Virus record (IMG/VR): IMGVR_UViG_3300049048_000052 | Span: 1 to 64,000 of that record | Strand: one strand, 5' to 3' | Length of the DNA stretch: 64,000 nucleotides | Shown here: one piece after another, positions 33,787 through 51,591 of the stretch | Position numbering within the stretch: position 1 is the first letter of the stretch | Layout: each line of letters begins with the position of its first letter | Translations under genes and position numbers: made by a program | The notes under the pieces: generated by a model | The model's database searches: none | Told to the model about the DNA's origin: nothing | The model's input: the letters and a program-made list of their open reading frames with translations, nothing else

Positions 33787-34086
33787 ATGCAATATAAGAT
33801 CGCCAACATCGACCTGTTCCGCTCCATGACCTCTTGGATGTGCCTGCAGCATCCTTGGGATGGTGGTGAACTGGTGGAGCTGACTGGAGACGAGTTTGAT
33901 CTACTGGTCTACTCTCTAGATCTCACATGGGGTCTAAAAGAGGAGGATGATACCTTCGCTATCTTCCTGGAGGAGATAGATGAGATGATTGCATCTCAAG
34001 AGAAGTATCGCTCTTGTCCTAAGATGCGTGACCATATCCCAGAGCCTATCGACTGGGATGACCTGGATAGCTTGTTAGACTTCTAG
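33787..34086 (+). CDS. Acidic hypothetical early protein
   Basis: ATG after AGGAGG; ends DWDDLDSLLDF. Confidence 0.65.
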   Translation: MQYKIANIDLFRSMTSWMCLQHPWDGGELVELTGDEFDLLVYSLDLTWGLKEEDDTFAIFLEEIDEMIASQEKYRSCPKMRDHIPEPIDWDDLDSLLDF

Positions 34087-34147
34087 GTAGACTAATAATA
34101 GGGCTAGCAATGGCCCTATTATTAGTTGTTAACCCTAGGAGGGTAGT

Positions 34148-34321
34148 ATGGATTACGTTATGATCTGTGATGCTAACGGCATGGTAGATTCTATCCCGGA
34201 TGATGAGACACTTGATAAGACAGTTGATGCCTTGATCAACCCTCTCGAATGGGGTGAGGAGTCTGCCATTAACCGCAACACCATTGCGGCATACCCTCTA
34301 GTTATCAATACTGCTAACTAG
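34148..34321 (+). CDS. Small acidic protein, 57 aa (MDYVMICDANG...)
   Basis: Below the ORF-track cut-off; AGGAGG SD, module-flanked. Confidence 0.6.
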   Translation: MDYVMICDANGMVDSIPDDETLDKTVDALINPLEWGEESAINRNTIAAYPLVINTAN

Positions 34322-34382
34322 GATAAGACATAAGGAGGGCTTTGGCCCTTTTTATGTTCTATTGTCCTAGGAGGACTTCGAT

Positions 34383-34829
34383 ATGTCTACCAAACTCGCT
34401 AAGCTTTACAATGTACAAGCCAAGCTGATGGAGGAACTCAATGAGCTGCAAGGCTTCTTGGGTTGCTTCCATAGCGTGGCTATGCTGCGTAGGCTAGATG
34501 AGCGTGAGGATCTTCTTATAAGTCTGCTCAGGTTAGTCGAGGATAATATCCAGACTGAACTGAACATATTAGATAATATAGATAACCTTGCGGGTATCGG
34601 TGGCAAGGGCGGTAGGATCCACTTCTACGTTAAAGCAGAGGTGGATACTAACGTTGGTGAGATTGAGTATGATGGAGGATTCTTCGGAGACCTCTCTCAG
34701 GATCGTACTCAGTGGTCCCGCTCTAAGCAGGCTAGGCTTCATGGAGGACACAAGTGCCTCAAGAAGTGGAAGCGCTCAGGGCGCTATGCTCGCCGTATGA
34801 CTAACCGTATTGACAAGTACGCCTGTTAG
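34383..34829 (+). CDS. Hypothetical early protein
   Basis: SD, module-flanked. Confidence 0.65.
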   Translation: MSTKLAKLYNVQAKLMEELNELQGFLGCFHSVAMLRRLDEREDLLISLLRLVEDNIQTELNILDNIDNLAGIGGKGGRIHFYVKAEVDTNVGEIEYDGGFFGDLSQDRTQWSRSKQARLHGGHKCLKKWKRSGRYARRMTNRIDKYAC

Positions 34830-34943
34830 TCAACACTAATAAAAGGGTTGTAGTGATCACCACTACAGACTAAGTCCAATTCACCTCAGGACTAGGGCCA
34901 ACTATGGCCCTTTTATTAGTTTACAGTCTAGGAGAGTACTAGT

Positions 34944-35201
34944 ATGCATTGCGATATCCGGAGCTACCAGCAATTACTTTGGGAGAAATCCTATTGTCAT
35001 CGTAAGGCACTGCTATTTTTAAACCTCTGGCACTTTAGGCGTTATGAGGAGGATAGAATAGCGGCAATGAATTACTGCATAATGTGGGGTGAGACACTTT
35101 CTCATATGCAGGAGAAGGGTATGTTAGTAGAACCAACTGACATTGCGATTGATAGTTATAGTATCGATTGCCTGCTCCAATATTGGAGGGAGGAGCAATA
35201 A
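34944..35201 (+). CDS. Hypothetical early protein
   Basis: Module-flanked. Confidence 0.55.
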   Translation: MHCDIRSYQQLLWEKSYCHRKALLFLNLWHFRRYEEDRIAAMNYCIMWGETLSHMQEKGMLVEPTDIAIDSYSIDCLLQYWREEQ

Positions 35202-35281
35202 CTTAATAAAAGGGCTCTATCAGGGGCCCTTTTATTAAGGAGATAGCCCAATACACTACATTCAATGGGCTCAATCATGCC

Positions 35282-35899
35282 ATGTCTATTTCTACTTCTT
35301 TGACTATCAAAGGTGCAGTTGTCGTGGGTAGCGGTGCCCAAGCAGTAACCTTCCTACATCCTAAGACAGGATACCTAGTTAAGGTAGCTAGACCAATTGA
35401 GTGGATGGAGGATCAAGACATCCTAAGGGAGGCCTTACTACAGCTATTAGCCTCTGTAGATGGTATAGCACCTAAGGTATATACTTGGAACAATGATGCC
35501 TTAGAGATAGAGATGGAGTATGTACCCTATAAGTTCATTGAGACAGTGGACAGCTACCTGGCTAATGATAACTGGGGTGCCGTACGCTCTCTATATTATT
35601 GGGCAGGTGTACAACTAGGTAAACTCCATAAGTTGGGGCTAGTCCACCTAGATAGCCATCCTAAGAACTGGATGGTCAACGAGGAAGGTATGCCTATTCT
35701 CATTGACTATGGGTTTGCCCAGGAGACAGATGATGCAACTCTGAGGGTTGTAGATTACACTACCTGTCTCTATGGGGATACCACCAGAGGTAAAGCCTAT
35801 GTAGGTCTACTAGGTATAGTTAATGATTTGGACCAAGAGGATAAGGATGACCTAGAGCAATGTTTTGCTAAGGGTTACCTCTTAGGTAAGGAGGGTTAA
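35282..35899 (+). CDS. Protein kinase-like (Bud32/RIO-type minimal kinase)
   Basis: VGSGAQA Gly loop, VKV lysine, EMEYV hinge, HLDSHPKN catalytic loop, IDYG. Confidence 0.88.
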   Translation: MSISTSLTIKGAVVVGSGAQAVTFLHPKTGYLVKVARPIEWMEDQDILREALLQLLASVDGIAPKVYTWNNDALEIEMEYVPYKFIETVDSYLANDNWGAVRSLYYWAGVQLGKLHKLGLVHLDSHPKNWMVNEEGMPILIDYGFAQETDDATLRVVDYTTCLYGDTTRGKAYVGLLGIVNDLDQEDKDDLEQCFAKGYLLGKEG

Positions 35900-35988
35900 T
35901 GTAAGGGCCTTTGCATGTTACCGTAGGACACATGCTTAATGCCTGACCCTTTTATAATTAATCGTATATATACGAATGGAATGACCAT

Positions 35989-36168
35989 ATGAAGATAAGC
36001 AGACAGGTGTTGGCCTTCCTTAGGATCATTGAGGATCTAAGAGCTAAGGGTATGCCCAGCGAGACTCTAATCGGATATTGCCAACATAAACTGGATAATG
36101 GTGCCCTAACTGAATTAGAGGTAGCTGAGATAAAAGCAAAGATGAGGATGTTAAAAGTAGAGGCCTAA
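35989..36168 (+). CDS. Small hypothetical protein, 59 aa
   Basis: Open frame MKISRQVLAFLRIIEDLRAKG... ending in the next module hairpin. Confidence 0.45.
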   Translation: MKISRQVLAFLRIIEDLRAKGMPSETLIGYCQHKLDNGALTELEVAEIKAKMRMLKVEA

Positions 36169-36226
36169 GGGCCCTTTTCTTATCCTAGATGCAAACAATC
36201 ATCAGTTCTAGGGTAGGAGATGCACT

Positions 36227-37471
36227 ATGAAGACCCTCAAGCAAGCACTGCTCAATGTACTAAGCAATGGTGTTAGCACTCAACAGTGGCAGGCATTGGA
36301 GGACAGGGGTATGAAAGGTTACCAAGAATTTGACAATATCCAGGCCTTGTCTGATAAGGTATCGATCAAGCAGGTAGCAGACATGGTCAAGTTGATAGCC
36401 CAGTCCATTGCCCTAACTTACCTCGTTGAAGGTAAGGGACGTAACATAGTTATCCTGGGTAGAGATCTATGGCCAGTGTACCCACTCTTAAAGAAGAATC
36501 CTTATTGCAGAAATAAGGTGCAGTACTTCTTATTCTCCAGACTACAATTGGGGGATAAGGGTACTCGGGAGCAATGGCTTAAAGAGGTGCCCCCAAACTC
36601 CATTGTGATTGATACAGGGTATGCTGGCAGCATATTCAAGGCTATCAAAGAGTTTGATCCCACTATTGAAGGATGGCTTGTATCTAGTAGGTCCTCTGAG
36701 TTCAAACAAATTAATCTCTTCAAGGCTACGTTGGGTCACCAAGAGATAGTAGAGATTATTGAGAGGGCACCTAAGATCATTGGCCGCTGTGTGGCTATAG
36801 ATCAGGATGGTAAGGCTCGTTGTCCTCAGGATACTAGAGACAACGATGAAAATGGACAATTCTCTGTTAGAGAGGCAGCCCTATGGAATAGAGGGTTAAT
36901 GCTTCACTTAGGACTTGATGCTCGTTGGGGTACATTCAGTGGTATTGTGCCTGAGGATCGGGTGCCTAATAAGTTACATAGCCACTACCTTAAGGTTAGA
37001 TATCTAAGATCTAAGCTTACAGACGTTAATACTAGCCGGGCTCCATTCAGAGCTAAGCTAGATAAGAAATGGCTTGAGCAGTTCATCAGAGCATACCTTG
37101 TACCCTTAGGTATTAAGGACTGTAAGCTAGATGACAAAGCCCAAGCCTCCGTGGGTTATTACAGCTTCGTTGGTAATAATGGAGATGTATTCGACCTAGA
37201 CCTTTGCCCGATAGTAGGTTCCTGGCGACTAATGAAAGGGGGCCATACCACTATATTGAGGTGGAATGAGTTCGATGGTCTAGTGGTGAGGACTCGCCGC
37301 TTTGAAAGTAAGGGGTTCGCCAAAGCATGTGAAATGTTTGGATCCTTAGCTCAGTACACAAAGGAGCTCTACTATAATCCTGACTCCGCAGATGTATACG
37401 ATGATTATGGTCCATATGATGACACCTATGATTATAGTGAGGACTCGGGTGGTGGTAATCTAGAGTTCTAA
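36227..37471 (+). CDS. PRTase-like fold protein
   Basis: ILGRDLWP and IVIDTGYAGSI motifs resemble PRPP-binding-loop proteins. Confidence 0.45.
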   Translation: MKTLKQALLNVLSNGVSTQQWQALEDRGMKGYQEFDNIQALSDKVSIKQVADMVKLIAQSIALTYLVEGKGRNIVILGRDLWPVYPLLKKNPYCRNKVQYFLFSRLQLGDKGTREQWLKEVPPNSIVIDTGYAGSIFKAIKEFDPTIEGWLVSSRSSEFKQINLFKATLGHQEIVEIIERAPKIIGRCVAIDQDGKARCPQDTRDNDENGQFSVREAALWNRGLMLHLGLDARWGTFSGIVPEDRVPNKLHSHYLKVRYLRSKLTDVNTSRAPFRAKLDKKWLEQFIRAYLVPLGIKDCKLDDKAQASVGYYSFVGNNGDVFDLDLCPIVGSWRLMKGGHTTILRWNEFDGLVVRTRRFESKGFAKACEMFGSLAQYTKELYYNPDSADVYDDYGPYDDTYDYSEDSGGGNLEF

Positions 37472-37551
37472 GATGTGGTTAAGAGGGCCCAGTCGGGCCC
37501 TTTTCTTATCCTAGGTAATAATCTATCTGTCCTAGGTTAGGAGATACACTC

Positions 37552-38001
37552 ATGTCCGTATACTATATCATCAACCAAGACAACTCTATCGTTCTGTCTG
37601 TAGGCGACGATGCTCGTTGCGGTGCAATCTACGACCAACAACAAGCAGAAGAGATTGCTGAAGGTTGCTATGATTGGGAAGTTATCTCTTTCCCTGCCTC
37701 ACCTATTCAGGTAACAGAACGGAAGTGGAAGGTTAATATTGTCCTACAGTTTGTAGGCGGTACTGACCGCAAAGAGTTCTTTGTGATGGGTACTTCTGCT
37801 CTAACTGTAGCCGAGCAGTTCAAAACTATTATCTTGAGCCGCTACCATGATTACATCTGGGCTGAGCAAGCACGTACTGCTAAGCCCTACCTTATTGGGG
37901 ATACACATGCACATTTCGAATTGGATTCCAATCGTAAGACCATTACAGTCAATGAGTATAGGGAGCCAGAGTTTAAGTCTGTGCGTGATATCAACTTCTA
38001 G
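37552..38001 (+). CDS. Hypothetical early protein
   Basis: GGAGATACACT leader. Confidence 0.65.
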   Translation: MSVYYIINQDNSIVLSVGDDARCGAIYDQQQAEEIAEGCYDWEVISFPASPIQVTERKWKVNIVLQFVGGTDRKEFFVMGTSALTVAEQFKTIILSRYHDYIWAEQARTAKPYLIGDTHAHFELDSNRKTITVNEYREPEFKSVRDINF

Positions 38002-38083
38002 ATTTGAATGAGTAGATGAGGGCCAGATATCTGGCCCTTTTCTTGTCCTAACACTTACTTTACCTAGGACAAGGAGATACACT

Positions 38084-39277
38084 ATGTCTATTTGTCAGTC
38101 TTGCGTATTCTACTTCAATCAAGACAACCATGGAGTGAAAACAATGTTATGTTCAGGTGGTTTGACTCTAGGAGTAGACAGTTGCTCTGGCTACGATGAG
38201 GGGGAGCCTAATATTCAGGACTCTTACCTTAACAAAGAAGTGATGGCTACTCTCGTGAACCCTGAGCCATCTATCCCAATAAGAGTAGTATCGATATCTG
38301 AGTCTCAAGCTTATGAGCGCCTGCTCTTTAGTTATAATGAGAATGGTTATGAGTGGACACCTATAGATGTCTACAATAACCGCATCGTCATTATTACCAA
38401 CTGTGGTGCCTATGCATGGTACTACCGTAGAGGGGTGGATAATGTATGGACCTTCCAGAGTTATGATGGAGGGGACACATTTGATGCCGTAGGTGATACA
38501 CCTCTACTAGCCTATCTCAGATATGACGGCTTCTGGGACTTTGAGCATGTCAGCTTAGAAAGAGAAACCAATGCCATTGCTATCAGCAGTGAGTTTGCTA
38601 TTGTAGGGTCTCCAGTAGGTTATTTCATTGGGCACCTAGTATTACAAGAGAACCTTACGACCCGTATCTGGGGTCTCATGCCTAAGTGCTTCAGGACTGA
38701 AGATGATGCGTATCGATATCTCCTGGATGACGCGAACAATATTACTGTCAGCAAGATCGAACTGGGCAACTCCTGTGACTCAGACCTGGGTCACTGGGTT
38801 AGAGATCTCCAGTCAATGGAAGATATGGATGATGTAACCATATATCCTATGGGTGATCTATTGGTCGTAGCCAAATGCTTTGCGCCTGATATGGACTGGC
38901 ATGTCATGACTAAGGCCTTTCAGATCGTGTGGAGTATCTCTAACTTCTTCGAGGAGGGATACTACCTCAGCCTGGAGGAGGTAGTGACCATGTACAAACA
39001 AGAGTCCCTACTTATACCTTGTCCATCTGTAGATTGTCCAGAGTATATGAAGGAGTTAGGGACTCTGTTCCCTAACCTTGAGTTTACATTCGAGGATGTA
39101 ACTGGGGATGGTCAGATCTATGCTACTTACAGCACAGATGAGACTATATTCTCTATTACTTCTCATGAACCAGGGATGTACTATGCCAGATTACATACTC
39201 CTGACGGTAATGAGGATCTTGAGAGTGATAGTCTGACAACTATTGCTGAGCACTACCTTGCTTACTTTCTGAGTTAG
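38084..39277 (+). CDS. Acidic hypothetical protein with N-terminal Cys cluster
   Basis: MSICQSCVFY..C..C; GGAGATACACT leader. Confidence 0.65.
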   Translation: MSICQSCVFYFNQDNHGVKTMLCSGGLTLGVDSCSGYDEGEPNIQDSYLNKEVMATLVNPEPSIPIRVVSISESQAYERLLFSYNENGYEWTPIDVYNNRIVIITNCGAYAWYYRRGVDNVWTFQSYDGGDTFDAVGDTPLLAYLRYDGFWDFEHVSLERETNAIAISSEFAIVGSPVGYFIGHLVLQENLTTRIWGLMPKCFRTEDDAYRYLLDDANNITVSKIELGNSCDSDLGHWVRDLQSMEDMDDVTIYPMGDLLVVAKCFAPDMDWHVMTKAFQIVWSISNFFEEGYYLSLEEVVTMYKQESLLIPCPSVDCPEYMKELGTLFPNLEFTFEDVTGDGQIYATYSTDETIFSITSHEPGMYYARLHTPDGNEDLESDSLTTIAEHYLAYFLS

Positions 39278-39570
39278 CAAGGTGTCCTTAGTTAATCCCT
39301 GAGAACACAGGGCTAATGCCAACAGGGGGCCTTCGGGCCCTCTTATTATGTAATGAATATATACTTGCCCTTCTATTGAGTCATGGGGCTAATGGGGAGA
39401 TACATTCTCCCCTTCTTATTCTTATCTAAGTTATATATCTGTCCTTTGACTAGGGACATTATAGGGAGCACAACTCCCTTCCTTATTTTAATTGTTGTAT
39501 CTCCGTACGGCTCATAGGGCCCTTTTATTATCCTAGGCACTATTTCTAATCCTAGGTTAGGAGATACACT

Positions 39571-40122
39571 ATGTCTAACTGCATCAACTGTGTTCATTTC
39601 ATTGAGCGGGCTACTTCAACTGGTAATGTCTTAAGGATGTGTAGGGTTAATGCCACCTTACATGATATTAACTGCACTAAAAAGGTTACAGGACCAGTGA
39701 AACCCATAAAGGGCCCAAGTCAGAAAGCGCTAGCAGCTACTGTATTGGAGTCTCTTCTGGGTTGGAAGGGAAGTAGCCTAGCTGCCAATCCTGCATCTAC
39801 GGACTCTAAAGTTAAAAGTAGTAGTGAGGCTAGAGTCCTGGCTAAGAAGCAGTACTATGCTAGTAAGGCTATGACTTTTAATACCTTTGATAGTCTAGGC
39901 ACCTTTACCAAACTTCTAAAACCTATCTTCCGAAGTCTAGGTGGTGATTGGCAATGTGGCTGCAGCAAGGATGGTACTGGCTACTACGCTAGGGCTGGTA
40001 ATATAATCATCTCCTATACTATAGCTAGTTATCAACCATGGCTCTACCTAGTGGAGGGGAGCGGTATCGCTGAGTCTTTTGAGACTTTTATACAACTCAA
40101 GCAGCGTGTATTGGGTTACTAG
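39571..40122 (+). CDS. Hypothetical protein with N-terminal Cys cluster
   Basis: MSNCINCVHF..C..C, same pattern as 38084. Confidence 0.65.
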   Translation: MSNCINCVHFIERATSTGNVLRMCRVNATLHDINCTKKVTGPVKPIKGPSQKALAATVLESLLGWKGSSLAANPASTDSKVKSSSEARVLAKKQYYASKAMTFNTFDSLGTFTKLLKPIFRSLGGDWQCGCSKDGTGYYARAGNIIISYTIASYQPWLYLVEGSGIAESFETFIQLKQRVLGY

Positions 40123-40246
40123 TCCCTAAGTTGTAAGTGGGGCCCGAGAAGGCCCCACTTACAACTACTGTATCTCCTGGCCCATTGGCCCTTTTATTAT
40201 CCTAGGTAACACTTTACCTATCCTAGGTTAATGGAGATACACTATC

Positions 40247-40966
40247 ATGGCTAACAACTCTACCTCTTCCTCTATCGTTCGCGCATTCTCTGCTAAGTTG
40301 AACATCTGCCAACGTCGTGCTACGGGTGCTAAGGGCGGTAACCTGGGTACTGTTACCAAGGGCTACATCCGTACCTCTCCTGTTTCCACCTGGATTCAAT
40401 GGTCTCCTATGGAGGGCAACCTGTTCCTGGGTGAGCAAGAGGTAACCCCTCAGCAACTGCATGAACTGTTCCGTTTCCCTAATGGGGTACAGCTGATTTT
40501 CAAGCTTGATCTGAAGAATGTGACGCTCATGCAGGACGGGGCTGTTATCATGCCGCTTGGTTCTGATATTGAGGACCAGAAGGCCAATATGATTGATATG
40601 TTGGATGATACTAGCGTGCAGTCTATTACTGTGCGTTGGACATCTAAGCTTATCTTCAGCCGTAAGCAAGAGGCTTACATCGGGAGTGCTGGTGATCTCC
40701 GCTTGCCTCAGGTAGTTTACATTGAGCAGGCTACTATTGAGCTCAACTCTGAACGTGTAGAGATTGGAGGGGATGCTGTAGAGCATGTGGAACTCATTGA
40801 AGCTATCGCTGCCCTGCAATCTAAGAAGCCTACTCGTAAGGGTTTGGCACGTGTGCAGGAGCGTATGGTGAACATGGATCCAGGAGTTATTACTCCCTCT
40901 AACGTGAGCAGCTTTGCTGAAGGCATGCCTTCCGAATCCCCAGAGGACATCATGAATATGATGTAA
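40247..40966 (+). CDS. Hypothetical protein, paralogue A upstream of RNAP
   Basis: AKLNICQR..G.KGG..WIQW shared with 41030; ends EDIMNMM. Confidence 0.75.
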   Translation: MANNSTSSSIVRAFSAKLNICQRRATGAKGGNLGTVTKGYIRTSPVSTWIQWSPMEGNLFLGEQEVTPQQLHELFRFPNGVQLIFKLDLKNVTLMQDGAVIMPLGSDIEDQKANMIDMLDDTSVQSITVRWTSKLIFSRKQEAYIGSAGDLRLPQVVYIEQATIELNSERVEIGGDAVEHVELIEAIAALQSKKPTRKGLARVQERMVNMDPGVITPSNVSSFAEGMPSESPEDIMNMM

Positions 40967-41029
40967 TCCTTACTTAATAAAAGGGCCATATGGCCCTTTT
41001 ATTGTCCCGTACCTAGTTATTCAACGGGA

Positions 41030-41743
41030 TTGGAGATTCAAATGTACATTGCAACACTCAATATCTGTCAGCGTGGTAAATGGGGATTGAAGGGCGGCAA
41101 GCGTGCCGTCATCACTAATGGTGCCATTATGCGTGGTGAGCCTCGTTGGTGGATTCAGTTCATTCCCACTGATGGCTTCATCTATAAGGATGAGTATCTA
41201 ATCAGTCCTGTAACTGATTGGATGCATACGCTATTAGCTGATGATGAGCTGAGTCTTATGTTCCGGGTTGGTGCCGATAGCGCTGACTTTATTACCCCTG
41301 ATGGTAAGAAGCATATGCTATATAGTCGTGAGGACCAAGAGAACTTCATGCTTGAGGTTCTTGAGGATCCTAGCATCACGGCGATGCGTATCGAGTGGAA
41401 CTGTAAGCTGTTGTTCAATAGCAATACAGACATTACCACTAATGGTCATGAATCCATGGTGGCCGAGATCTGTGAGGCTACTGTATATCTTCTTGAGGCC
41501 ACTCGCTTTGAGAATGATAAGACTGAGGTAGCACCTGAGGAACTGGATGATGCGACTAAGCCATTCTTAGTTCCTAAGGGTGAATCCAAGGGTCTGTCTG
41601 GGGTACAGAATAATCTCAGTCGTGCTAAGCGTAAACGCGCCGAGAGAAAAGAGAGACACCGGGCAGTTAAGGCTGGTACGGTACTGGACGATGATATTGC
41701 TAGTGTAGCTGAGGCTGCAGAGAGCATCATCGATATGATGTAA
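41030..41743 (+). CDS. Hypothetical protein, paralogue B upstream of RNAP
   Basis: ATLNICQR..GLKGG..WIQF; ends ESIIDMM. Confidence 0.75.
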   Translation: MEIQMYIATLNICQRGKWGLKGGKRAVITNGAIMRGEPRWWIQFIPTDGFIYKDEYLISPVTDWMHTLLADDELSLMFRVGADSADFITPDGKKHMLYSREDQENFMLEVLEDPSITAMRIEWNCKLLFNSNTDITTNGHESMVAEICEATVYLLEATRFENDKTEVAPEELDDATKPFLVPKGESKGLSGVQNNLSRAKRKRAERKERHRAVKAGTVLDDDIASVAEAAESIIDMM

Positions 41744-41818
41744 TACCTATATACAAAATAGGACAATAAGGGGGCCATCGGCCCTTTTATTGTACACTCC
41801 CTTTATTGGAGAACCACT

Positions 41819-44800
41819 ATGTCTGCTATTGACTTCTCTCGTTTGACCGTGCCCGCTACTGCTAGCCAGGAACAGATCAGTGACCTGATCGATTGTCTGG
41901 GTGAGTTAGGTTACCAGGTGGTACCTGGACCTGACTTTAGAGTGGATGCGTCTGATGTCTTTATGCCCTTTAAGGGTGTGGAGACGGATGACGTAGCCTT
42001 GCTGGCTTACGCTCTAAGTACAGTGCTCAGCGGTCTCGGTATTGGTCTGCCTGAAACGGCAGCTGATGAATACGAGGCTGCCGCTGATGTTGATGGCCTG
42101 GTCCAGTATGTCCGGGCTATGTTCGATAACCCTAGTCAAGAGGAAACAATGGAAGAAGTCATTGAAGTTCAGGATCCAACTCCCTCCGTTAAGGTTGTTG
42201 GTTCTACTAAGGAAAACTTGCTCCCTCCAATTGTGTGGGAGAATCGCCCCATCGCTGAGATGAATGATATCATCTGTCGCTCTATGGGCACCAACTGGGA
42301 TAAACCTCTACCTTCTTGGGTACGCCTTGCTACTGCCTTTACGCATATTGGCCGTACTATTCTACCTACTGAATGGTTAGAAGGGGGCCGTATCGACCGC
42401 AGTCATAACTATGTCCGTACTGATGGCCGTTCCATTCTGAAGGCTATGTACAAGTTGGGTGTACCTCTCGTTGGTACCTCTACCAAGGTTAAGTTCTCTG
42501 AAGGTCAACCCATTGAGACTGTGGAACCCTGCCGTTTCAATGTTACCTTCACCACTCGGGATAACACCTACTTCGTTATCCCTGAGATTGAATCTGTTGT
42601 GGATGAAATGCCTCCACTCTTTGATGCAGAGCGTATGTCTCATGGCATGGTTAATTATGTCCATGAGGTAGTAAGTGCACTGGATGATGAGACCCTCCTG
42701 CAATTCTGGGCTAAGTTCATTCCTAACTCTAGTCTCAATGGTCGTGAGCTCACCTTCAGCCCTAGCGGTGTCTCTCAATACACCAATGTAATTGTTCGCT
42801 TGCCTGAGGCTGAGGACGAGCTGATTAGTGTTAGTACTGGTCGCACTCGCTATGTCAATCCTGTAATGGATGTTAGTGGTATTGTTGTATCTGGCCGCAC
42901 CATCCTGACCATGATGCTCATGAGTCTCGTAAATGAGGCCGAGTATTTGATTACTCAATCACGTGTAGATGGATACCTGAACCTGCTCTCTAATATGTGG
43001 GTACCCGCTGAGAATTATGGGGCCTTCAAGAAGAGTGGTGAGGCCATCCATAAAATCTACAACAATAGGGAGCTCCCAGTGGGCATGTATTGCACTCTGG
43101 GTATCCGTTATCCCTTCATTCACTTAGTGAATGTTAGTGCTGCCGCTAATAACGGTATCACTTCCTCTCGTCATATGGTAGAGGAATTCATCAAGAAGGG
43201 TATTGCTGCACTGCCTCACAAATATGGCACCTTTGGCAAGGCTGTCGTATTTGGTGCAGGGGTAAACGCCATGGGTATGGCGATCGCCCGTAATGAATAT
43301 GGCAACTATGTTGTCAATAACCTGGAGACTGATGAAGCATGGCAGCGCATGATCATGCGTACTGTCCTGGATGCATCTAAGCCTTCCAAGTTCTTCAACC
43401 GTCCCTGGACGTTCTTTGGTTCTGTCTTTGCTGATGGTACTGAGGACTTCCCGCTTGAGAAGTCTAAGCTCCATATGATGACCTATCATCCTGTGGATAA
43501 GGAAGGTACCGAGTTTATCAATGAGGCGGTCTATGTTCGCGGTGTGCGTCGTAAGATCTGTTATACCAATAGCCTCCTGACTCATGGCTCTGGTGTTGCT
43601 TCTGTTAACCCCAGCCGCCAAGCCATCCGTTATTCCGTTGGTAAGTCTGAGGCTGATATGATTAATGATTACAGCATCCCTCCTACATTCCGTAAGGTAT
43701 TTGAGAAGGATGCTGAGACTCGTAATGGGGCAGGTATGAACTCTGACTGGCTGCAGATTGTAGCTGAGAAGCTTCAAGAGAAGGCTGATCGTATTGTCGA
43801 TGAGGCCAAGGCCACCGGTAAGGTATTTCATGATGGGGATGTCGTAATGACTCTCTTTGCTGATCTGCCTGATTATAAGCGTGATCTGGTTGTGGTTACT
43901 GCACCTAACCAGGATATCTATCTGGAACGTGCTGAAGTAGTACGTGTGGCAACTACTAATGCTGTACGTGTGCGCTTCTTTACTCGCTTTGAGGGTGAGG
44001 ATTATATCCTTAAGCTGCGGGGTCCCGGTGTTAAGTTCACTACTCAGTTGGATGATATCACTTTCCTGAGTGGTTTCAGTGATTGGGATCTGTTCCTCAA
44101 CATGGAGTGCACTAAGGGCGAACTCGCTCAACTGTACATGTATGCTGAGGCCGTCGGTGAATGTATCTACTATCCTGATACCGGTTTATTGGAGCATGTT
44201 GCTACTGGTAAGGTAGAAGATTTGAAGGATGTTGGCGCTCCTTTCTACAAGTGGGTTGCAGACAATACCGCTAAGGAGGTTATTGAGCGTAAGGTATCCA
44301 AGGAGTACTTGGAATACATTGCCGAATGCCATCCTGGTCTGGTTGCCTTTACTGAGGACGATGTTACCAATAAGTCTGATATTGTTGTCAAGGCTGATCT
44401 GGGTCATGACTATCTTGTCCATGAGACCATCCAATGTCTTGTGGGTGATATGCTCTTCATGGTGGAGATCTCCACTCCTCGTGAGAATACTAGCCCTGCT
44501 GGTCTTACTCTGGAGCAGCTTGCCCTACTCGAGGGTGTCTATGCTGACTTGGCACTGGCATTCATTCACCTGTCTAAGGAGTTCCACTCCGGTATCCAAG
44601 GTATGGCTAAGCTGATCTTGGGTAAGTTGCCCTCTCAGGATCAAGTACCCTACCTTAACCTCATTGAGGCTGGGGATGTAGTAAACCGCGTCTCCCGGAC
44701 CGATAAGGGTATCCTCATGGGACGTCGCCTGATGCAGGCGCTTAAGAAGGAGTTTCCTAAGGGCTTTGTGCTCTTCAGCACTGACAGCTTTGGAGTCTAC

Positions 44801-46660
44801 TATGACTTTGATTCCATGTCCCGCTTTATGGCATTCTCTGGTGAGAGTGGTGCCTCTGGGGCTGCTGCTGATATCTCTCAGCTCTTTCATCAACTGGGTA
44901 TGCCTGCTGATAAGCGTTCTGCTCGTTACTGGCCTGCATCTATCCATGCACTTAACGTCAGTGCTCAGAATCTGATCACCGCTTGGGTTACCCAGATGGG
45001 TGGTGAGGAAGGTAAGGGCAGCAAGGTGCTCTCCCGTTTAGGCCGTACTGCTAAGATTGGCAGCAACCTGAAAGTTAAGACTGTCCATGTTATGGGGGGT
45101 GTTAGCGAAGGTAAGTTCATCACTCGTCCTGCTTATATGCAGGGACTTCCTGTGATGGGCTTGAATCCTAATTGTGCCAGTGTTAAGCGTCTGGGTATTA
45201 AGGCGGGTGATGTAGTCATGGCGGGTCGTACTCCTATGGGCTTCCCTGTCTTCTGCTATGCAGACGTACATCCTTGCTATGCTATTGCACATGGTTACCT
45301 CTTGGCTAACGTCTGGGCCTGGTGTAACGAGGGTGACGGTGATGGTGATCCTATGGCTATCTTCAATGTGACTGGTATCATTACTGAGGATAATCAGTGG
45401 CGTTACAATCGTAAGATTGAGCTGCGTGAGCTGAGCATCAAGGCGGCTGAGTCTGGTGACTTTACCAAGGCTAAGTCTTTAAGCACTCAAGCTGAATCTA
45501 TCAAGGCTCTGCCTCTGCCTACCTATGAGAAGATGGCTGCCCTGAATAAGGGTTATCTCTCTCTCGGTGGTTATGCTGCTATCTATGGTAGCCCTCGTAA
45601 GCATCCCTTTGCTGAGTTCTGTTCTCCTGCTGATAAGTGGTCTAAGAAGCTGCTTAATCTGGATGTGGATAAGATGATGCCTGGGCATTATCCTGCTGAC
45701 GAGAAGGCAATGAAGAAGGCTACTCGTAAGTCTCTGATCACTGATATCCCTGTGATGGACTATCTCAATGCCAATGATGCAGTAGCTAATCACTATCGTA
45801 TCAATGTTGGTATTGGCTACGGGGTTGCCTCTGCTCTGGCATTCCTGTTGGCGGATCGTCGTCGTAAGGCTATCATTGAAGCCAGTAAGAAGGCTATTGC
45901 TGAGGGCCATGATGTAGAGATCTACAATGGCGGTATGCAGCTGTATATTAATAGCGATGAGGCTGATAACTTCATCCGTCTTCAACTGGCTAAGAATGAG
46001 GAGCTGGTTAACCTTACCCGTGGTACGGTATTGGCCTGGCGTATGCTGTATGAAGGCTATGGTCTGGCTGGTGTCTCTGATGAGGCAACCATGGCATTCC
46101 GTATCCTCGATGTAGCGGCTCGTTCTAATGACCGGCGTATTGCTGTAGTTACTGTGGATGGTCAACCGCGCGTTGAGTATCCTAACTTCAAGCCTGAAGC
46201 AGGTACTGTGGCTACTCAGCCTGTGCTGAAGAATGGGGCTGCCTATCTAACTAGCTTCATCTTTGAGAAGTCTCCTGAGCTCCGTCATTCTATGCTCGGT
46301 GGGGTGAATGAGCTTATTCGTGCTCGCTCTCTGACGGTAGCCATCCGCGACATGGAACGTGGTCGTGAGCCTCGTACTATGCGCCATACCACCTTTTCTG
46401 ATGTGGTAATTGCAGGTGCGTCACGTCGTCTGGGTCAGGGTCAGTTTGGTGTGCAAGAGCAGACCGACTTCTCTGATGAGGGGGACAATGAAGCACACTC
46501 CATGTTTGAGCTGTTGGAAGGTATCCGTTGTGCTAATGGTGGTGCTTATCCCGTTCATAGCAACGTGGTTAAGTACTATCTGAGTATTGGTGCCTCCATC
46601 ATGTACAGCATGGAGATGCACGCTAAGACCAAGCGTGCTGAGATGAATCAGGGCTACTAA
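41819..46660 (+). CDS. Single-subunit two-barrel RNA polymerase (YonO/crAss-like, non-virion)
   Basis: GRTP (R1137), then CNEGDGDGDPMAIF (D1173-D1177) matching beta' RxP..NADFDGDQMAVH; K732..K739 in LKLRGPGVKF resembles the beta lysine pair. Confidence 0.85.
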   Translation: MSAIDFSRLTVPATASQEQISDLIDCLGELGYQVVPGPDFRVDASDVFMPFKGVETDDVALLAYALSTVLSGLGIGLPETAADEYEAAADVDGLVQYVRAMFDNPSQEETMEEVIEVQDPTPSVKVVGSTKENLLPPIVWENRPIAEMNDIICRSMGTNWDKPLPSWVRLATAFTHIGRTILPTEWLEGGRIDRSHNYVRTDGRSILKAMYKLGVPLVGTSTKVKFSEGQPIETVEPCRFNVTFTTRDNTYFVIPEIESVVDEMPPLFDAERMSHGMVNYVHEVVSALDDETLLQFWAKFIPNSSLNGRELTFSPSGVSQYTNVIVRLPEAEDELISVSTGRTRYVNPVMDVSGIVVSGRTILTMMLMSLVNEAEYLITQSRVDGYLNLLSNMWVPAENYGAFKKSGEAIHKIYNNRELPVGMYCTLGIRYPFIHLVNVSAAANNGITSSRHMVEEFIKKGIAALPHKYGTFGKAVVFGAGVNAMGMAIARNEYGNYVVNNLETDEAWQRMIMRTVLDASKPSKFFNRPWTFFGSVFADGTEDFPLEKSKLHMMTYHPVDKEGTEFINEAVYVRGVRRKICYTNSLLTHGSGVASVNPSRQAIRYSVGKSEADMINDYSIPPTFRKVFEKDAETRNGAGMNSDWLQIVAEKLQEKADRIVDEAKATGKVFHDGDVVMTLFADLPDYKRDLVVVTAPNQDIYLERAEVVRVATTNAVRVRFFTRFEGEDYILKLRGPGVKFTTQLDDITFLSGFSDWDLFLNMECTKGELAQLYMYAEAVGECIYYPDTGLLEHVATGKVEDLKDVGAPFYKWVADNTAKEVIERKVSKEYLEYIAECHPGLVAFTEDDVTNKSDIVVKADLGHDYLVHETIQCLVGDMLFMVEISTPRENTSPAGLTLEQLALLEGVYADLALAFIHLSKEFHSGIQGMAKLILGKLPSQDQVPYLNLIEAGDVVNRVSRTDKGILMGRRLMQALKKEFPKGFVLFSTDSFGVYYDFDSMSRFMAFSGESGASGAAADISQLFHQLGMPADKRSARYWPASIHALNVSAQNLITAWVTQMGGEEGKGSKVLSRLGRTAKIGSNLKVKTVHVMGGVSEGKFITRPAYMQGLPVMGLNPNCASVKRLGIKAGDVVMAGRTPMGFPVFCYADVHPCYAIAHGYLLANVWAWCNEGDGDGDPMAIFNVTGIITEDNQWRYNRKIELRELSIKAAESGDFTKAKSLSTQAESIKALPLPTYEKMAALNKGYLSLGGYAAIYGSPRKHPFAEFCSPADKWSKKLLNLDVDKMMPGHYPADEKAMKKATRKSLITDIPVMDYLNANDAVANHYRINVGIGYGVASALAFLLADRRRKAIIEASKKAIAEGHDVEIYNGGMQLYINSDEADNFIRLQLAKNEELVNLTRGTVLAWRMLYEGYGLAGVSDEATMAFRILDVAARSNDRRIAVVTVDGQPRVEYPNFKPEAGTVATQPVLKNGAAYLTSFIFEKSPELRHSMLGGVNELIRARSLTVAIRDMERGREPRTMRHTTFSDVVIAGASRRLGQGQFGVQEQTDFSDEGDNEAHSMFELLEGIRCANGGAYPVHSNVVKYYLSIGASIMYSMEMHAKTKRAEMNQGY

Positions 46661-46704
46661 TCTGATCTAGTAAGGGGGCCTACGGGCCCTTTTACTAGTG
46701 TTTG

Positions 46705-46881
46705 ATAGGGCAGCGAAAGCCATATAACATGAAGGAGCGGTAATCCTCTAGTGAGTGTCGGTTAAAGGTTATAGAACCGAAGGAGCGGTCCCGTAAGGGA
46801 TGCAGCGAAAGGTGACTAGGCTGAAGGAGCGGCTTACTATGATTATGCAGCGAAAGTGTTATAGGTGAAGGAGCGCCTATT
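46705..46881 (+). ncRNA. Candidate structured RNA with tandem bipartite motif GCAGCGAAAG..TGAAGGAGCG
   Basis: Motif A at 46710, 46802, 46847; motif B at 46730, 46779, 46822, 46866; GTAA tetraloop hairpin; ends can pair. Confidence 0.55.
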
Positions 46882-47014
46882 ATTCATTACTCCCTATCTT
46901 TTTGGCCAGCCGGTTTGATATGGTGTTATGGATTATCTTGTACTATCTACTTTCACCTACTTAGATGACTATCTAGGTCTATCCACTTTGACTAAGTAGG
47001 ATTGTAGGGGGTTT

Positions 47015-47299
47015 ATGCCTGAAGATAACTCACTTCTTAACCAGTGTGGCGTAGAATGGCGTTCATTCGTTATTGGATGCTATGCTAGCGATTCCTATGT
47101 TCTTGATATCTGTCTCTATCCTATAGGGGACATTATGATGATCCAGATTGATTATGACTTAGGTCTTATCTGGATAGTAATGGAGTCACCAACCACTTTT
47201 GTGTGGAAGGAGGTGGTGTATCAGGAGGATATAAGAGGGACATCCCCTTTGGTAGCCTATGAGCACTATCTAGAGTACAGATCTACTCTCACTAGATAA
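47015..47299 (+). CDS. Hypothetical protein
   Basis: ORF with GGGG SD-like sequence. Confidence 0.5.
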   Translation: MPEDNSLLNQCGVEWRSFVIGCYASDSYVLDICLYPIGDIMMIQIDYDLGLIWIVMESPTTFVWKEVVYQEDIRGTSPLVAYEHYLEYRSTLTR

Positions 47300-47429
47300 G
47301 TGAATCTCACACCTGGTTATCTGTTTATAGATGCCAGACTGGGAGATTCAGCTATCTCCTCAGCGTGGGTGGGGTCCAAACCCCTCACCTGTTCATGTTC
47401 CGATAACATTGTTTAGGACATTAATTACC

Positions 47430-48272
47430 ATGACTCAAGCACAAGAAAAGGCACCTACCTCTGCTAATGCGGCCCAAGAGGTCATTGGCATGTACGAAAA
47501 GATGATCGGTGAGATTAAGGATAAGCCTGAGGTGAAAGATCGGGGCATTATCATCTTAGAGCGCAACGTGTCGTCTCAAAGTCGCCTCTCCAACAGTGGC
47601 TCCGCTGCTCAGCGGAGCTTCATTTATCAGGCGGGTATGAACCGTCCTGGGGTAACCCCTGAAGATCAACGTCCCCAGATTATTGGGACGTGTATGGGCA
47701 ACAGCAAGTTGTATTTGTCCACTATGGATAAAGATTTCAACTTGGGCGATGACGTCGTTGAAGTAGATGAACTGCGGCCCCTATCTGTTTCTGTGGACCT
47801 GGCCCCTGAGCAGGCCGATAAGCTCAACGAGTATGTCGAAGAGCATAAAGGTGCTCGGGCCCTGCGCATCATCATGCACGTGAGCATGTATGCACGGATG
47901 GTAAGACTAACGCGGCAGCAACTGAGCATGTTCCTGTCTCAGTATGCACCCGATAGTGAGGCCTTCAAGAAGGCCAAGGGTGAGTTGGAAAACTTGGTGG
48001 TAAGTATCCCTGATGCTTATATTATCGACATCGAGCCAGCGCGGGGTTTCTCAGATACCTCCTTTGCTGGAGTCAGCAAAGCGGATATGCTGAAGCAAGC
48101 CCGTTCCTCTTGGGCAACTGGTCTGAATGCCTCTCGTGAGCGGACTAAGATCTTCGCCCAACAACAGAACGAAATGGCGCTGGCTCAGGGTAGCGATACC
48201 GACCAGGACAACCTGGGCACTGATGGTACCCCTGCTGTGCAGTCAGTTGAAGATGTTGCTAACATGATGTAA
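47430..48272 (+). CDS. Possible SSB/OB-fold-like protein with acidic tail
   Basis: Likely start at ATG 47430; high-expression codons; tail DTDQDNLG..VEDVANMM. Confidence 0.5.
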   Translation: MTQAQEKAPTSANAAQEVIGMYEKMIGEIKDKPEVKDRGIIILERNVSSQSRLSNSGSAAQRSFIYQAGMNRPGVTPEDQRPQIIGTCMGNSKLYLSTMDKDFNLGDDVVEVDELRPLSVSVDLAPEQADKLNEYVEEHKGARALRIIMHVSMYARMVRLTRQQLSMFLSQYAPDSEAFKKAKGELENLVVSIPDAYIIDIEPARGFSDTSFAGVSKADMLKQARSSWATGLNASRERTKIFAQQQNEMALAQGSDTDQDNLGTDGTPAVQSVEDVANMM

Positions 48273-50857: not shown

Positions 50858-50929
50858 ACAGGATTAGTTCAGTGTTAGCAGAACATCCCCTCTAAAGGGA
50901 CAAGATAGGTTCAATTCCTATGTTCTGTT
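50858..50929 (+). tRNA. tRNA with CUA (amber) anticodon, atypical
   Basis: TCCC-CTCTAAA-GGGA anticodon arm (4 bp), ATAGG-TTCAATT-CCTAT T arm; D loop lacks GG. Confidence 0.65.
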
Positions 50930-51519: not shown

Positions 51520-51591
51520 GCAGATATAGCTCAAAGGTAGAGCATATGGACGTTTGTTCATAAGATGTAGGTTCGACCCCTACTATCTGCT
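51520..51591 (+). tRNA. tRNA-like gene with 8-nt anticodon loop (Asn GTT-derived?)
   Basis: GCAGATA/TATCTGC acceptor, GCTC-AAAGGTA-GAGC D arm, loop ACGTTTGT, GTAGG-TTCGACC-CCTAC T arm. Confidence 0.7.

What the first reader, a model, noticed from the sequence alone, without database searches (positions are those of the whole stretch)
40247..48272. Three RNAP-flanking proteins share an acidic C-terminal tail ending in -MM
Seen: SPEDIMNMM (40966), AAESIIDMM (41743), SVEDVANMM (48272). The first two are paralogues; the third is otherwise unrelated. Established: acidic tails ending in hydrophobic residues (SSB DDDIPF) are docking motifs, and N4 RNAPs need ssDNA-binding cofactors. Inference: interchangeable specificity factors or SSB-like activators that dock on one site of the 1613-aa RNAP, or a shared degron.
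Basis: partly seen in the sequence, partly recalled or inferred. Interest (0 to 1): 0.7.

Follow-up and report, generated by a model that had tools for sequence, protein, structure and literature searches.

The report
Shared docking tail beside phage RNAP
Three small proteins encoded around a phage's own YonO/QDE-1-type RNA polymerase end in the same selected acidic-hydrophobic tail, which most likely plugs all three into one common partner; this makes them the first concrete candidates for accessory factors of this poorly understood polymerase class.

Summary
ORFs 40247-40966 (A), 41030/41042-41743 (B) and 47331/47430-48272 (C) end in SPEDIMNMM, AAESIIDMM and SVEDVANMM. They are the only 3 of 322 ORFs in this 252-kb jumbo myovirus genome that end in Met. 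The similarity is in the protein, not the DNA. The 1613-aa neighbour is an RNAP, but a two-barrel single-subunit enzyme of the YonO/QDE-1 class, not N4/T7-like. A and B belong to a tiny undescribed family: 9 representatives among 1.8 billion proteins, no Pfam or PHROG match. Wherever context is available, family members lie next to this RNAP. The model shows a confident beta-rich, OB/SSB-like core, a disordered linker and a C-terminal tip. Relatives keep the tip (acidic-acidic-Φ-φ-[D/N/E]-x-Φ-COOH), but its last two residues change between genomes and match within genomes: MM; G/N-V; G-I/M (p 0.0004). C, and a 141-aa ORF in a relative, carry the same tip on unrelated bodies. The best reading is an SSB-Ct-like docking peptide for one shared partner, probably the RNAP. 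That partner is not shown, because the tail-RNAP complex prediction gave no answer. Rival partners are the phage's own beta-clamp or replisome, a host protein, mutual assembly, or a degron.

The parts
40247..40966 (+). Protein A (239 aa), A-type member of the RNAP-flanking family: beta-rich OB-like core (about residues 14-192), disordered residues 194-239, tail SPEDIMNMM
   Evidence: ORF. GGAG ribosome-binding site. AlphaFold model with pLDDT 75.5, core above 85 and C-terminus below 50. PDB matches are weak but almost all OB/SSB proteins.
40937..40963 (+). C-terminal tip of A (SPEDIMNMM)
41030..41743 (+). Protein B (237 aa from TTG; probably 233 aa from the ATG at 41042), B-type member with a Lys/Arg-rich helix before the tail AAESIIDMM
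   Evidence: BLASTP against A gives E 3e-20. The B-type clade has 91/95 support. In four lineages the B-type gene lies immediately upstream of the RNAP gene.
41714..41740 (+). C-terminal tip of B (AAESIIDMM)
41819..46660 (+). 1613-aa single-subunit two-barrel RNA polymerase (YonO/QDE-1 class)
   Evidence: ESM Atlas look-alikes carry PF05183 RdRP (score 0.94). Core model compared with PDB: P23-45 gp96, QDE-1, bacterial beta/beta', Rpb2, RDR2. VIA Z 12.0 to QDE-1 and 11.6 to Rpb2.
44012..44035 (+). KLRGPGVK (K732, R734, K739): invariant basic residues, proposed equivalent of the beta-type barrel Lys/Arg pair
   Evidence: Invariant across lineages at 25-55% identity. Coordinates checked. The assignment to the beta-type barrel is inferred.
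45227..45349 (+). R1137-T-P1139, then 34 residues, then D1173-G-D1175-G-D1177: the R-x-P and DxDxD metal-binding signature of the beta'-type barrel
   Evidence: Invariant in alignments A3 and A4. The spacing resembles Rpb1 R446/P448 to D481-D485 as listed in PMC2919709.
47331..48272 (+). Protein C (313 aa, or 280 aa from 47430): an ORFan body with the same tip, SVEDVANMM
   Evidence: The low-confidence ESM Atlas model has SSB/OB/YorF neighbours at TM 0.24-0.31, which is a lead only.
48243..48269 (+). C-terminal tip of C (SVEDVANMM)
40983..40996 (+). Terminator-like palindrome AATAAAA-GGGCC-ATAT-GGCCC-TTTTATT after gene A
41772..41784 (+). Palindrome of the same type after gene B
46676..46689 (+). 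Palindrome of the same type after the RNAP gene

Best explanation
Proposed mechanism. A, B and C each end in a short linear docking motif. Its general form is acidic-acidic-Φ-φ-[D/N/E]-x-Φ-COOH; in this phage it is E-[D/S]-[I/V]-x-[N/D]-M-M. The motif sits at the end of a flexible linker. A and B are paralogues of a small new family with a beta-rich, OB/SSB-like core. The family is encoded directly beside a YonO/QDE-1-type single-subunit RNA polymerase. C has a different body with the same tip.

The tip most likely works like the SSB C-terminal tip or the T7 gp2.5/gp4 tails. On that model the terminal hydrophobic residues and the free carboxylate enter a pocket on one shared partner, and the acidic residues meet a basic rim. 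Several factors can then be tethered to, or compete for, one site. The most probable partner is the co-encoded RNAP. The OB-like factors would then help it use melted or single-stranded template, or set its promoter class.

Shown: the motif exists, is under selection, lies on a disordered end, is carried by different protein bodies, co-varies within genomes, and is linked in gene order to the RNAP.

Inferred: that it is a docking peptide, that the core binds ssDNA, and that the RNAP is the receptor.

The confidence of 0.45 is for the whole statement. I put about 0.7 on 'functional shared docking motif' and about 0.35-0.4 on 'the RNAP is the receptor'.
For: Motif and statistics.

The family is tiny. 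A profile search of 1.8 billion representatives found 9 proteins.

Synteny. Every member with usable context lies next to the RNAP gene. In L001 the order is a, b, RNAP, c. In L004 it is RNAP, a 141-aa ORF, then P0008. In L006 and L007 a B-type gene lies directly upstream of the RNAP N-terminus. Ma-LMM01-type phages, whose RNAP is only 25% identical, keep a family member (gp065-like; hmmsearch E 1e-5, hhalign 92.6%) immediately upstream of the RNAP gene.

Tails in relatives:
- L001: VQDIVDGV, EGDIIDNV, TSVAENV.
- Sample SRR20069391: ANDLAGI, SNLIDGI, EGLDGM, plus DEPIEGI on an unrelated 141-aa ORF.
- L007: VEDIIDMM, MDEVADLL.
- Ma-LMM01 clade: DIDINDLLD, ADINGLLD, ADINNILD.
- More distant lineages: DDEFADVDL, EESEVNV, DADDLVII.

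Co-variation. The A-type/B-type duplication predates the split of these genomes (B clade support 91/95). Yet the last two residues are shared by paralogues within a genome and differ between orthologues (permutation p 0.0004).

Structure. In the model of A the core has pLDDT above 85 and residues 194-239 fall below 50. The best PDB matches are phage p2 SSB, SsbA, PriB, T7 gp2.5, TPP1 and Pot1, all OB folds.

Genome context. No canonical SSB (PF00436) was found in the genome. No other ORF in the genome carries the tip.

Expression. In Ma-LMM01, gp064 (the RNAP homologue) and gp065 fall in the same middle expression class, B5 (PMC5780444 supplement).

Open question in the field. Whether YonO needs extra factors to initiate is stated as unresolved (PMC5467207).
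Against: - The one tail-RNAP complex prediction scored 0.15 against a mark of 0.32, which is no answer. Only RNAP residues 534-1450 could be included.
- The OB assignment is weak: best Z is 4.0-4.3. The ESM Atlas shape search instead lists prohead-protease-like models at TM 0.31-0.37.
- The fold of C is unknown.
- Co-variation is imperfect. L007 has MM on one protein and LL on the other.
- Treating the three SRR20069391 contigs as one genome is an assumption.
- Co-variation within a genome fits a host or other phage receptor equally well.
- The phage encodes its own beta-clamp and clamp loader, which are classical hubs for C-terminal tails.
- SPbeta YonO's neighbours have no such tails.
Confidence: 0.45

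Rival explanations
1. The three proteins are the phage's ssDNA-binding proteins for replication and recombination. Their tails recruit replisome components or the phage's own beta-clamp, as the SSB-Ct tip and the T4 gp43/gp33/gp55 clamp-binding tails do. Alternatively the tails contact a host protein such as host RNAP, as N4 SSB does. On this view the position next to the RNAP gene only reflects co-expression.
For: - No canonical SSB (PF00436) is present in a genome rated 100% complete.
- The genome encodes a beta-clamp homologue (177,564-178,748) and a clamp-loader subunit (181,289-182,533).
- In Ma-LMM01, gp064 and gp065 are expressed with the replication genes, in the middle class B5.
- Tails such as I-I-D-M-M loosely resemble acidic/hydrophobic clamp-binding ends (own knowledge).
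- A receptor that differs between phages or hosts would explain the co-variation equally well.
Against: - No replisome-module protein carries the tip. Only the three RNAP-flanking ORFs end in M.
- The replication module has its own candidate SSB, a 374-aa protein with a CxxC...C cluster whose end (EDSPF) resembles the canonical SSB tip.
- The tails lack the Q-L-x-L-F clamp consensus.
- The family is tightly linked to the RNAP gene across lineages whose RNAPs share only 25% identity.
Confidence: 0.2
2. The tails act among the three proteins themselves. They could hold an RPA-like hetero-oligomer of OB proteins together. Or they could fold back onto the basic DNA-binding surface or the Lys/Arg-rich helix as an auto-inhibitory DNA mimic, as in T7 gp2.5 and T4 gp32.
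For: - Three OB-like proteins share one tip.
- B-type members, gp065, gp063 and C all have a Lys/Arg-rich stretch 20-40 residues before the acidic tip.
- Mutual packing would also give matched terminal residues within a genome.
Against: - AlphaFold did not dock the tail of A onto its own core. Residues 209-239 have pLDDT below 50.
- A 7-residue tip is short for a stable bundle.
- The same tip occurs on an unrelated 141-aa ORF in L004.
Confidence: 0.15
3. The tail is a shared sorting or turnover signal. It could be a C-terminal degron for a host or phage protease, or a signal that loads these proteins into the capsid.
For: - C-terminal tags with a free carboxylate and non-polar last residues are a known class of degron (own knowledge).
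- Weak structural matches of A to prohead proteases, whose C-termini target the procapsid.
Against: - The acidic context is unlike ssrA-type tags.
- No conserved His or Ser is present that could make a protease (invariant columns).
- The genes lie in a non-structural block with terminator-like hairpins after nearly every gene, far from the head genes.
- A degron for a conserved host machine would not need lineage-specific last residues.
Confidence: 0.07
4. The shared tail has no function of its own. It was inherited through duplication or gene conversion of a C-terminal segment and is drifting.
For: - A and B are paralogues, and their last 27 nt share 20 positions.
- C aligns loosely with the family's G-L-x-x-V-Q element and basic stretch, so its C-terminal module may have been acquired by recombination.
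Against: - The linkers just upstream cannot be aligned, whereas the tip is kept across RNAP lineages down to 25% identity.
- C differs from A and B at synonymous positions.
- The motif also occurs on unrelated bodies.
Confidence: 0.03

Closest known systems
Bacterial SSB C-terminal tip (SSB-Ct, ...DDDIPF) (own knowledge)
   Same: A folded OB domain, a disordered linker and a short acidic tip that ends in a hydrophobic residue with a free carboxylate. The tip acts as a hub-docking peptide for many partners.
   Different: No PF00436 match. The OB core is only weakly similar (Z about 4). The tip sequence differs (E-D-I-x-N-M-M rather than D-D-D-I-P-F). There are three different carrier proteins, and they are tied in gene order to an RNAP rather than to the replisome.
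T7 gp2.5 SSB and gp4 helicase-primase acidic C-terminal tails ending in Phe, both docking on the gp5/thioredoxin polymerase (own knowledge; 1je5 is among the structural matches)
   Same: Proteins that are otherwise unrelated share an acidic tail with an essential terminal hydrophobic residue, and they use the same site on one polymerase. The tail can also fold back on the DNA-binding cleft.
   Different: In T7 the partner is a DNA polymerase. Here the candidate partner is a two-barrel RNAP and is unproven. The terminal residue is Met, Val, Ile or Leu rather than Phe.
T4 late transcription: the C-terminal tails of gp33, gp55 and gp43 bind the gp45 sliding clamp (own knowledge)
   Same: Transcription factors and a polymerase share a C-terminal hydrophobic/acidic peptide that binds one mobile hub. 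This phage also encodes its own clamp.
   Different: The clamp consensus is absent from these tails. No replisome protein in this genome carries the tip.
N4 gp2 and N4 SSB (gp45), ssDNA-binding cofactors of N4 RNAPII and of host RNAP
   Same: ssDNA-binding proteins serve as obligatory transcription cofactors. N4 SSB acts through its C-terminal end.
   Different: N4's own RNAPs are T7-like, whereas this RNAP is two-barrel. There is no sequence or family relationship.
YonO of SPbeta, P23-45 gp64/gp96, crAss-like phi14:2 gp66 and QDE-1: single-subunit two-barrel RNAPs (PMC5467207, PMC10770324, PMC2919709)
   Same: The fold and the catalytic signature of the 1613-aa protein. It is a phage-encoded, non-virion-type enzyme. 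The Ma-LMM01 homologue is a middle gene, much as YonO drives late genes.
   Different: No Pfam PF05183 hit and no hhalign link to YonO. The protein is about twice YonO's length. Flanking tail-bearing factors have not been described for any of these enzymes, and YonO's neighbours lack them.

Membership tests
Two-barrel (double-psi beta-barrel) single-subunit RNAP, YonO/QDE-1 class | Two DPBB domains forming the active centre | tested here: met
   AlphaFold model of residues 330-1450 (pLDDT 64.5; residues 574-1410 mostly 70-90). The Foldseek top list is almost entirely two-barrel RNAPs. VIA Z 12.0 to QDE-1 (342 residues aligned) and 11.6 to Rpb2.
Two-barrel (double-psi beta-barrel) single-subunit RNAP, YonO/QDE-1 class | DxDxD metal-binding triad, with R-x-P about 35 residues upstream | tested here: met
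   R1137-T-P1139 and D1173-G-D1175-G-D1177 are invariant across six lineages at 25-55% identity. The signature is as described in PMC2919709.
Two-barrel (double-psi beta-barrel) single-subunit RNAP, YonO/QDE-1 class | Conserved basic pair in the second barrel | tested here: inconclusive
   K732, R734 and K739 (KLRGPGVK) are invariant. Their structural equivalence to Rpb2 K979/K987 was not checked residue by residue.
Two-barrel (double-psi beta-barrel) single-subunit RNAP, YonO/QDE-1 class | Sequence-profile membership (Pfam PF05183 RdRP, or a detectable link to YonO) | tested here: not met
   No Pfam hit for this protein or for three relatives. hhalign against YonO gives E 0.49. The profile search against PDB sequences found nothing. 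Only the language-model look-alikes carry PF05183.
Two-barrel (double-psi beta-barrel) single-subunit RNAP, YonO/QDE-1 class | DNA-dependent RNA synthesis | not testable with these tools
   Needs an enzyme assay.
   All structural matches are two-barrel enzymes.
SSB-type OB-fold protein with a C-terminal acidic tip | OB-fold core | tested here: inconclusive
   The best PDB matches are all OB/SSB proteins but weak (Z 4.0-4.3; Foldseek E at least 0.04). The ESM Atlas shape search prefers prohead-protease-like models at TM 0.31-0.37.
SSB-type OB-fold protein with a C-terminal acidic tip | Sequence membership (PF00436 or phage SSB families) | tested here: not met
   No Pfam, PHROG or PADLOC hit for A, B or C. 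PF00436 is absent from the genome.
SSB-type OB-fold protein with a C-terminal acidic tip | Disordered linker ending in an acidic tip with a hydrophobic last residue | tested here: met
   pLDDT is below 50 over residues 209-239 of A. The last 10 residues have net charge of -2 to -3 in 13 of the 14 tails examined.
SSB-type OB-fold protein with a C-terminal acidic tip | ssDNA binding | not testable with these tools
   Needs EMSA or fluorescence titration.
Sliding-clamp-binding C-terminal motif | Q-L-[S/D]-L-F or Q-x-x-L-x-F type consensus | tested here: not met
   The tails were read directly. Only one of about 14 has a Gln, and its spacing does not fit.
Sliding-clamp-binding C-terminal motif | Binding to the phage clamp (177,564-178,748) | not tested
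   The clamp exists.
C-terminal degron (ssrA-like) | Non-polar end (such as LAA) without flanking acidic residues | tested here: not met
   All tails are acidic.

The most novel reading that the evidence does not exclude
The cyanophage-related YonO/QDE-1-class RNAPs work as a holoenzyme. Two or three OB-like accessory factors are tethered to one pocket of the polymerase by a family-specific C-terminal code that co-evolves with the polymerase. Different bodies (A-type, B-type, C, the 141-aa ORF) plug into the same site to switch template or promoter class during infection. These would be the first initiation or specificity factors known for any single-subunit two-barrel RNAP. It would also explain how Ma-LMM01 runs three temporal gene classes without altering host transcription.
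Probability: 0.3. Interest if true: 0.8.

Novelty: new variant of a known kind. Interest (0 to 1): 0.55.

Why it matters
Single-subunit two-barrel RNAPs (YonO, P23-45 gp64, crAss gp66) are thought to resemble the ancestor of cellular RNAPs. How they find promoters, and whether they need factors, is still open; the YonO paper says so explicitly.

This work contributes four things:
- A conserved gene trio or quartet around such an RNAP.
- A new protein family.
- A portable 7-residue tip that gives a precise experimental handle, through peptide pull-down or deletion of 2-7 residues.
- A culturable relative, Ma-LMM01 on Microcystis aeruginosa.

In Ma-LMM01 the homologous RNAP (gp064) went unrecognised. 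The published transcriptome study concluded that the phage has no promoter motifs of its own, and it left open how three temporal classes are produced.

Tried and rejected
- Pfam, PHROGs and PADLOC on A, B and C found nothing.
- tblastn of A and C against 50,697 phage records found nothing.
- The word-index homologue search for C returned only C itself. For the RNAP it returned only one relative.
- PF05183 was searched in the protein, its relatives and the genome, with no hit.
- hhalign of the RNAP profile against SPbeta YonO was not significant. The profile search against PDB sequences was empty.
- hhalign of C against the A/B family, and of the gp063 family against A/B and C, was not significant at E 0.02-0.07. 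C is therefore treated as unrelated, apart from a loosely alignable C-terminal module.
- The 3717-aa ORF was tested as a second (virion) RNAP. BLASTP shows no similarity to the 1613-aa RNAP or to the giant RNAP-containing protein of My-WqHQDG, so this was dropped.
- The complex prediction of tail plus RNAP core gave no answer.
- Sequencing runs: only soil-metagenome DNA holds this phage, with no RNA, so no transcript map could be made.
The close-clade RNAP alignment found nothing in JGI metagenomes.
- A DNA-level repeat or gene conversion as the cause of the tail likeness was rejected on codon usage.
- Tandem Repeats Finder found no array downstream of the RNAP gene. The repeat finder did find roughly 44-46-nt spaced copies there.
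Full report
**Setting.** The window is the first 64 kb of a single 251,780-bp virus record (42.6% G+C) from a soil metagenome. CheckV rates the record complete. It is a jumbo myovirus with a tail sheath gene at 1889-4384(-), a major head protein gene at 9158-10486(-) and a portal gene at 14133-15629(-). Its nearest cultured relatives, and only distant ones, are the Microcystis phages of the Ma-LMM01 group.

**Observation.**
- A and B are paralogues: 28% identity, E 3e-20.
- C is not detectably related to them and has no homologue anywhere searched.
- Of 322 non-overlapping ORFs in the genome, only these three end in Met, all in Met-Met.
- The expected number of MM ends is 0.23, giving P(>=3) = 0.0017. 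The seven-residue pattern E-[DS]-[IV]-x-[ND]-M-M is expected 2.6e-5 times per genome.
- The tails use different synonymous codons. Selection therefore acts on the peptide and not on a DNA element.

**The large neighbour is an RNAP, but not an N4-type one.** Sequence profiles find nothing.
- Pfam gives no hit, including PF05183, for the protein, three relatives or the genome.
- hhalign against SPbeta YonO is not significant.
- The profile search against PDB sequences is empty.

Other evidence is consistent and points to a two-barrel enzyme.
- Language-model look-alikes are PF05183 RdRP-type phage proteins, score 0.94.
- Alignments spanning six lineages at 25-55% identity keep KLRGPGVK (K732, R734, K739), R1137-T-P1139 and, 34 residues later, D1173-G-D1175-G-D1177. 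This is the signature of two-barrel RNAPs as described in PMC2919709.
- An AlphaFold model of residues 330-1450 has pLDDT 64.5, with its core mostly at 70-90. Foldseek matches it to P23-45 gp96, QDE-1, bacterial beta/beta', Rpb2, poxvirus RNAP and RDR2.
- VIA-align gives Z 12.0 to QDE-1 and 11.6 to Rpb2.

The protein is therefore a single-subunit two-barrel RNAP of the YonO/QDE-1 class. The N4 analogy does not.

**The A/B family.** A profile of five members searched against 1.8 billion representative proteins found only nine proteins. They come from four lineages:
- this phage;
- a 27.9-kb Logan contig (L001);
- three contigs of sample SRR20069391 (L004-L006);
- one contig of SRR33230377 (L007).

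Two subfamilies exist. The B-type clade is supported at 91/95 and has a Lys/Arg-rich helix before its tail. Gene order is conserved. A-type and B-type genes lie upstream of the RNAP gene, with the B-type gene immediately upstream, and another tail-bearing gene lies downstream. In the Ma-LMM01 clade, whose RNAP is only 25% identical, the gene directly upstream of the RNAP gene (gp065 and its homologues) is a family member by hmmsearch (E 1e-5) and hhalign (92.6%, E 4.6e-7).

**Fold of A.** The AlphaFold model of A has pLDDT 75.5 and pTM 0.65. It shows a confident beta-rich core (residues 14-192) and a disordered C-terminal region (194-239). Three PDB searches give only weak matches, but almost all are OB-fold ssDNA or RNA binders: T7 gp2.5, lactococcal phage p2 SSB (Z 4.0-4.3), SsbA, PriB, TPP1 and Pot1. 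BFVD holds one clear structural relative, an uncharacterised phage protein (E 6e-9), followed by SSBs and prohead proteases. The ESM Atlas shape search prefers prohead-protease-like models at TM 0.31-0.37. I therefore call the core OB/SSB-like and treat the assignment as inconclusive. No His or Ser is invariant, so an active protease is unlikely.

**The tail in relatives.**
- L001: VQDIVDGV, EGDIIDNV, TSVAENV.
- SRR20069391: ANDLAGI, SNLIDGI, EGLDGM, plus DEPIEGI on an unrelated 141-aa ORF between the RNAP gene and the A-type gene.
- L007: VEDIIDMM and MDEVADLL.
- Ma-LMM01 clade: DIDINDLLD, ADINGLLD, ADINNILD upstream; STNPMD/E downstream.
- More distant RNAP lineages: DDEFADVDL, EESEVNV, DADDLVII, EEPFDMEIS on flanking ORFs.

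The linkers just upstream cannot be aligned. The consensus is acidic-acidic-Φ-φ-[D/N/E]-x-Φ-COOH.

The last two residues are shared by paralogues within a genome (MM/MM/MM; GV/NV/NV; GI/GI/GM/GI) and differ between orthologues. This holds even though the A/B duplication is older than the genomes' divergence (permutation p 0.0004). There are two caveats: the three SRR20069391 contigs are assumed to be one genome, and L007 has MM and LL. This pattern is what a set of peptides tracking one shared, lineage-specific pocket would produce.

**Protein C.** C carries the tip on another body. Its C-terminal 70 residues align loosely with the family's G-L-x-x-V-Q element and basic stretch, so C may have gained the module by recombination. 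The low-confidence ESM Atlas model of C has SSB, OB, YorF and DUF3127 neighbours at TM 0.24-0.31. That is a lead only.

**Who is the partner?** The synteny points to the RNAP. The only complex prediction allowed, RNAP 534-1450 with the last 40 residues of A, scored 0.15 against a mark of 0.32. Context keeps the rivals alive.
- The genome lacks a canonical SSB.
- It encodes its own beta-clamp and a clamp-loader subunit.
- Next to them lies a 374-aa protein with a Cys cluster and an SSB-like end...YEDSPF. This looks like the replicative SSB with a different tip.

No replisome protein carries the MM tip. I read that as favouring a separate, transcription-linked docking code, but it is not proof. 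In Ma-LMM01, gp064 (the RNAP homologue) and gp065 are middle genes of class B5. gp063, the downstream tail-bearing gene, is the first gene of the early cluster, class B1. The published study did not recognise gp064 as a polymerase.

**Mechanism proposed.** The tips are SSB-Ct-like docking peptides that tether two or three OB-like factors to one site, most probably on the RNAP. There the factors would help the enzyme engage melted or single-stranded template, or set its promoter class. I put about 0.7 on 'functional shared docking motif' and about 0.35-0.4 on 'the RNAP is the receptor'. The rivals, with my confidence in each, are:
- a replisome, clamp or host receptor (0.2);
- mutual assembly or auto-inhibition (0.15);
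- a degron or capsid-targeting signal (0.07);
- no function (0.03).

**Novelty.** Acidic-hydrophobic C-terminal docking tails are a known device (SSB-Ct; T7 gp2.5 and gp4; T4 clamp binders; own knowledge). Three things are new here:
- the protein family;
- its fixed association with a YonO/QDE-1-class RNAP;
- the lineage-specific tail code carried on unrelated bodies.

SPbeta YonO's own neighbours have no such tails, so this is a feature of the cyanophage-related clade and not of all YonO-like systems.

Noticed in passing
window 32516-46689 (for example 33008-33023, 37485-37500, 39327-39340, 40983-40996, 41772-41784, 46676-46689): Extended palindromes of the form A-rich/GGGCC-N3-6-GGCCC/TTTT(A/C)TT follow almost every gene in this block. 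There are 13 in the 252-kb genome (0.2 expected), and 11 of them are in the window. Many are followed by one or two CCTAGG sites and then GGAG-ATACACT-ATG. They look like intrinsic terminators around single-gene units, possibly combined with a phage promoter or operator.
   Followed up: partly
window 46703-46876: Four copies of GCAGCGAAAG-N12-GAAGGAGCGG, spaced about 44-46 nt apart, lie in the 354-bp gap just downstream of the RNAP gene. Ma-LMM01 has an annotated 42-bp repeat array at the same position, between gp064 and its first early gene, gp063 (L002 12476-12756).
   Followed up: partly
L002 7195-12216 (Ma-LMM01 gp064) and homologues in L009-L026: Ma-LMM01 gp064, annotated as hypothetical, is a homologue of the two-barrel RNAP. 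It is 25% identical over 1100 residues and keeps the DxDxD and R-x-P motifs. It is a middle-class gene. The published transcriptome paper assumed there was no phage RNAP.
   Followed up: partly
window 16633-27786 (+): A 3717-aa ORF lies next to the head genes. It matches PHROG 31006 (unknown function, E 1.7e-147), has no Pfam domain and shows no similarity to the 1613-aa RNAP. Its function is unknown.
   Followed up: partly
L003 1159-11391 (Microcoleus phage My-WqHQDG): A 3410-aa protein contains the same RNAP catalytic region (27% identity over query residues 1018-1341) fused to a NADAR domain (E 3e-20). This recalls the giant virion-RNAP fusions of P23-45 and the crAss-like phages.
   Followed up: no
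genome 177,059-184,507 (outside the window; L029-L031): A replication module holds a beta-clamp homologue (177,564-178,748), a clamp-loader subunit (181,289-182,533) and a 374-aa protein with a Cys cluster ending ...NNDYEDSPF. The last is a candidate replicative SSB with a canonical-looking tip.
   Followed up: partly
L001 15979-16179, 16755-17051, 17195-17569: Three further small ORFs of the relative's contig end in acidic-x-V (EEDLPDQV, SVEAEGV, GELDIV). In that phage the tail code may extend to more proteins.
   Followed up: no
window 50858-50929 and 51520-51591: Two tRNA genes (Rfam RF00005). The intergenic sequence between 50.2 and 51.6 kb suggests there may be more.
   Followed up: no
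window 35282-35899 (+): A 205-aa ORF has weak matches to protein-kinase and APH families (E 9e-7 and 3e-5). Ma-LMM01 has an annotated 'kinase' (gp062) in its early cluster.
   Followed up: no
window 33766-34086 and 36227-37471: Two other ORFs in the same block have acidic tails ending in Phe (...DDLDSLLDF and ...SGGGNLEF). This may be a second tail type.
   Followed up: no
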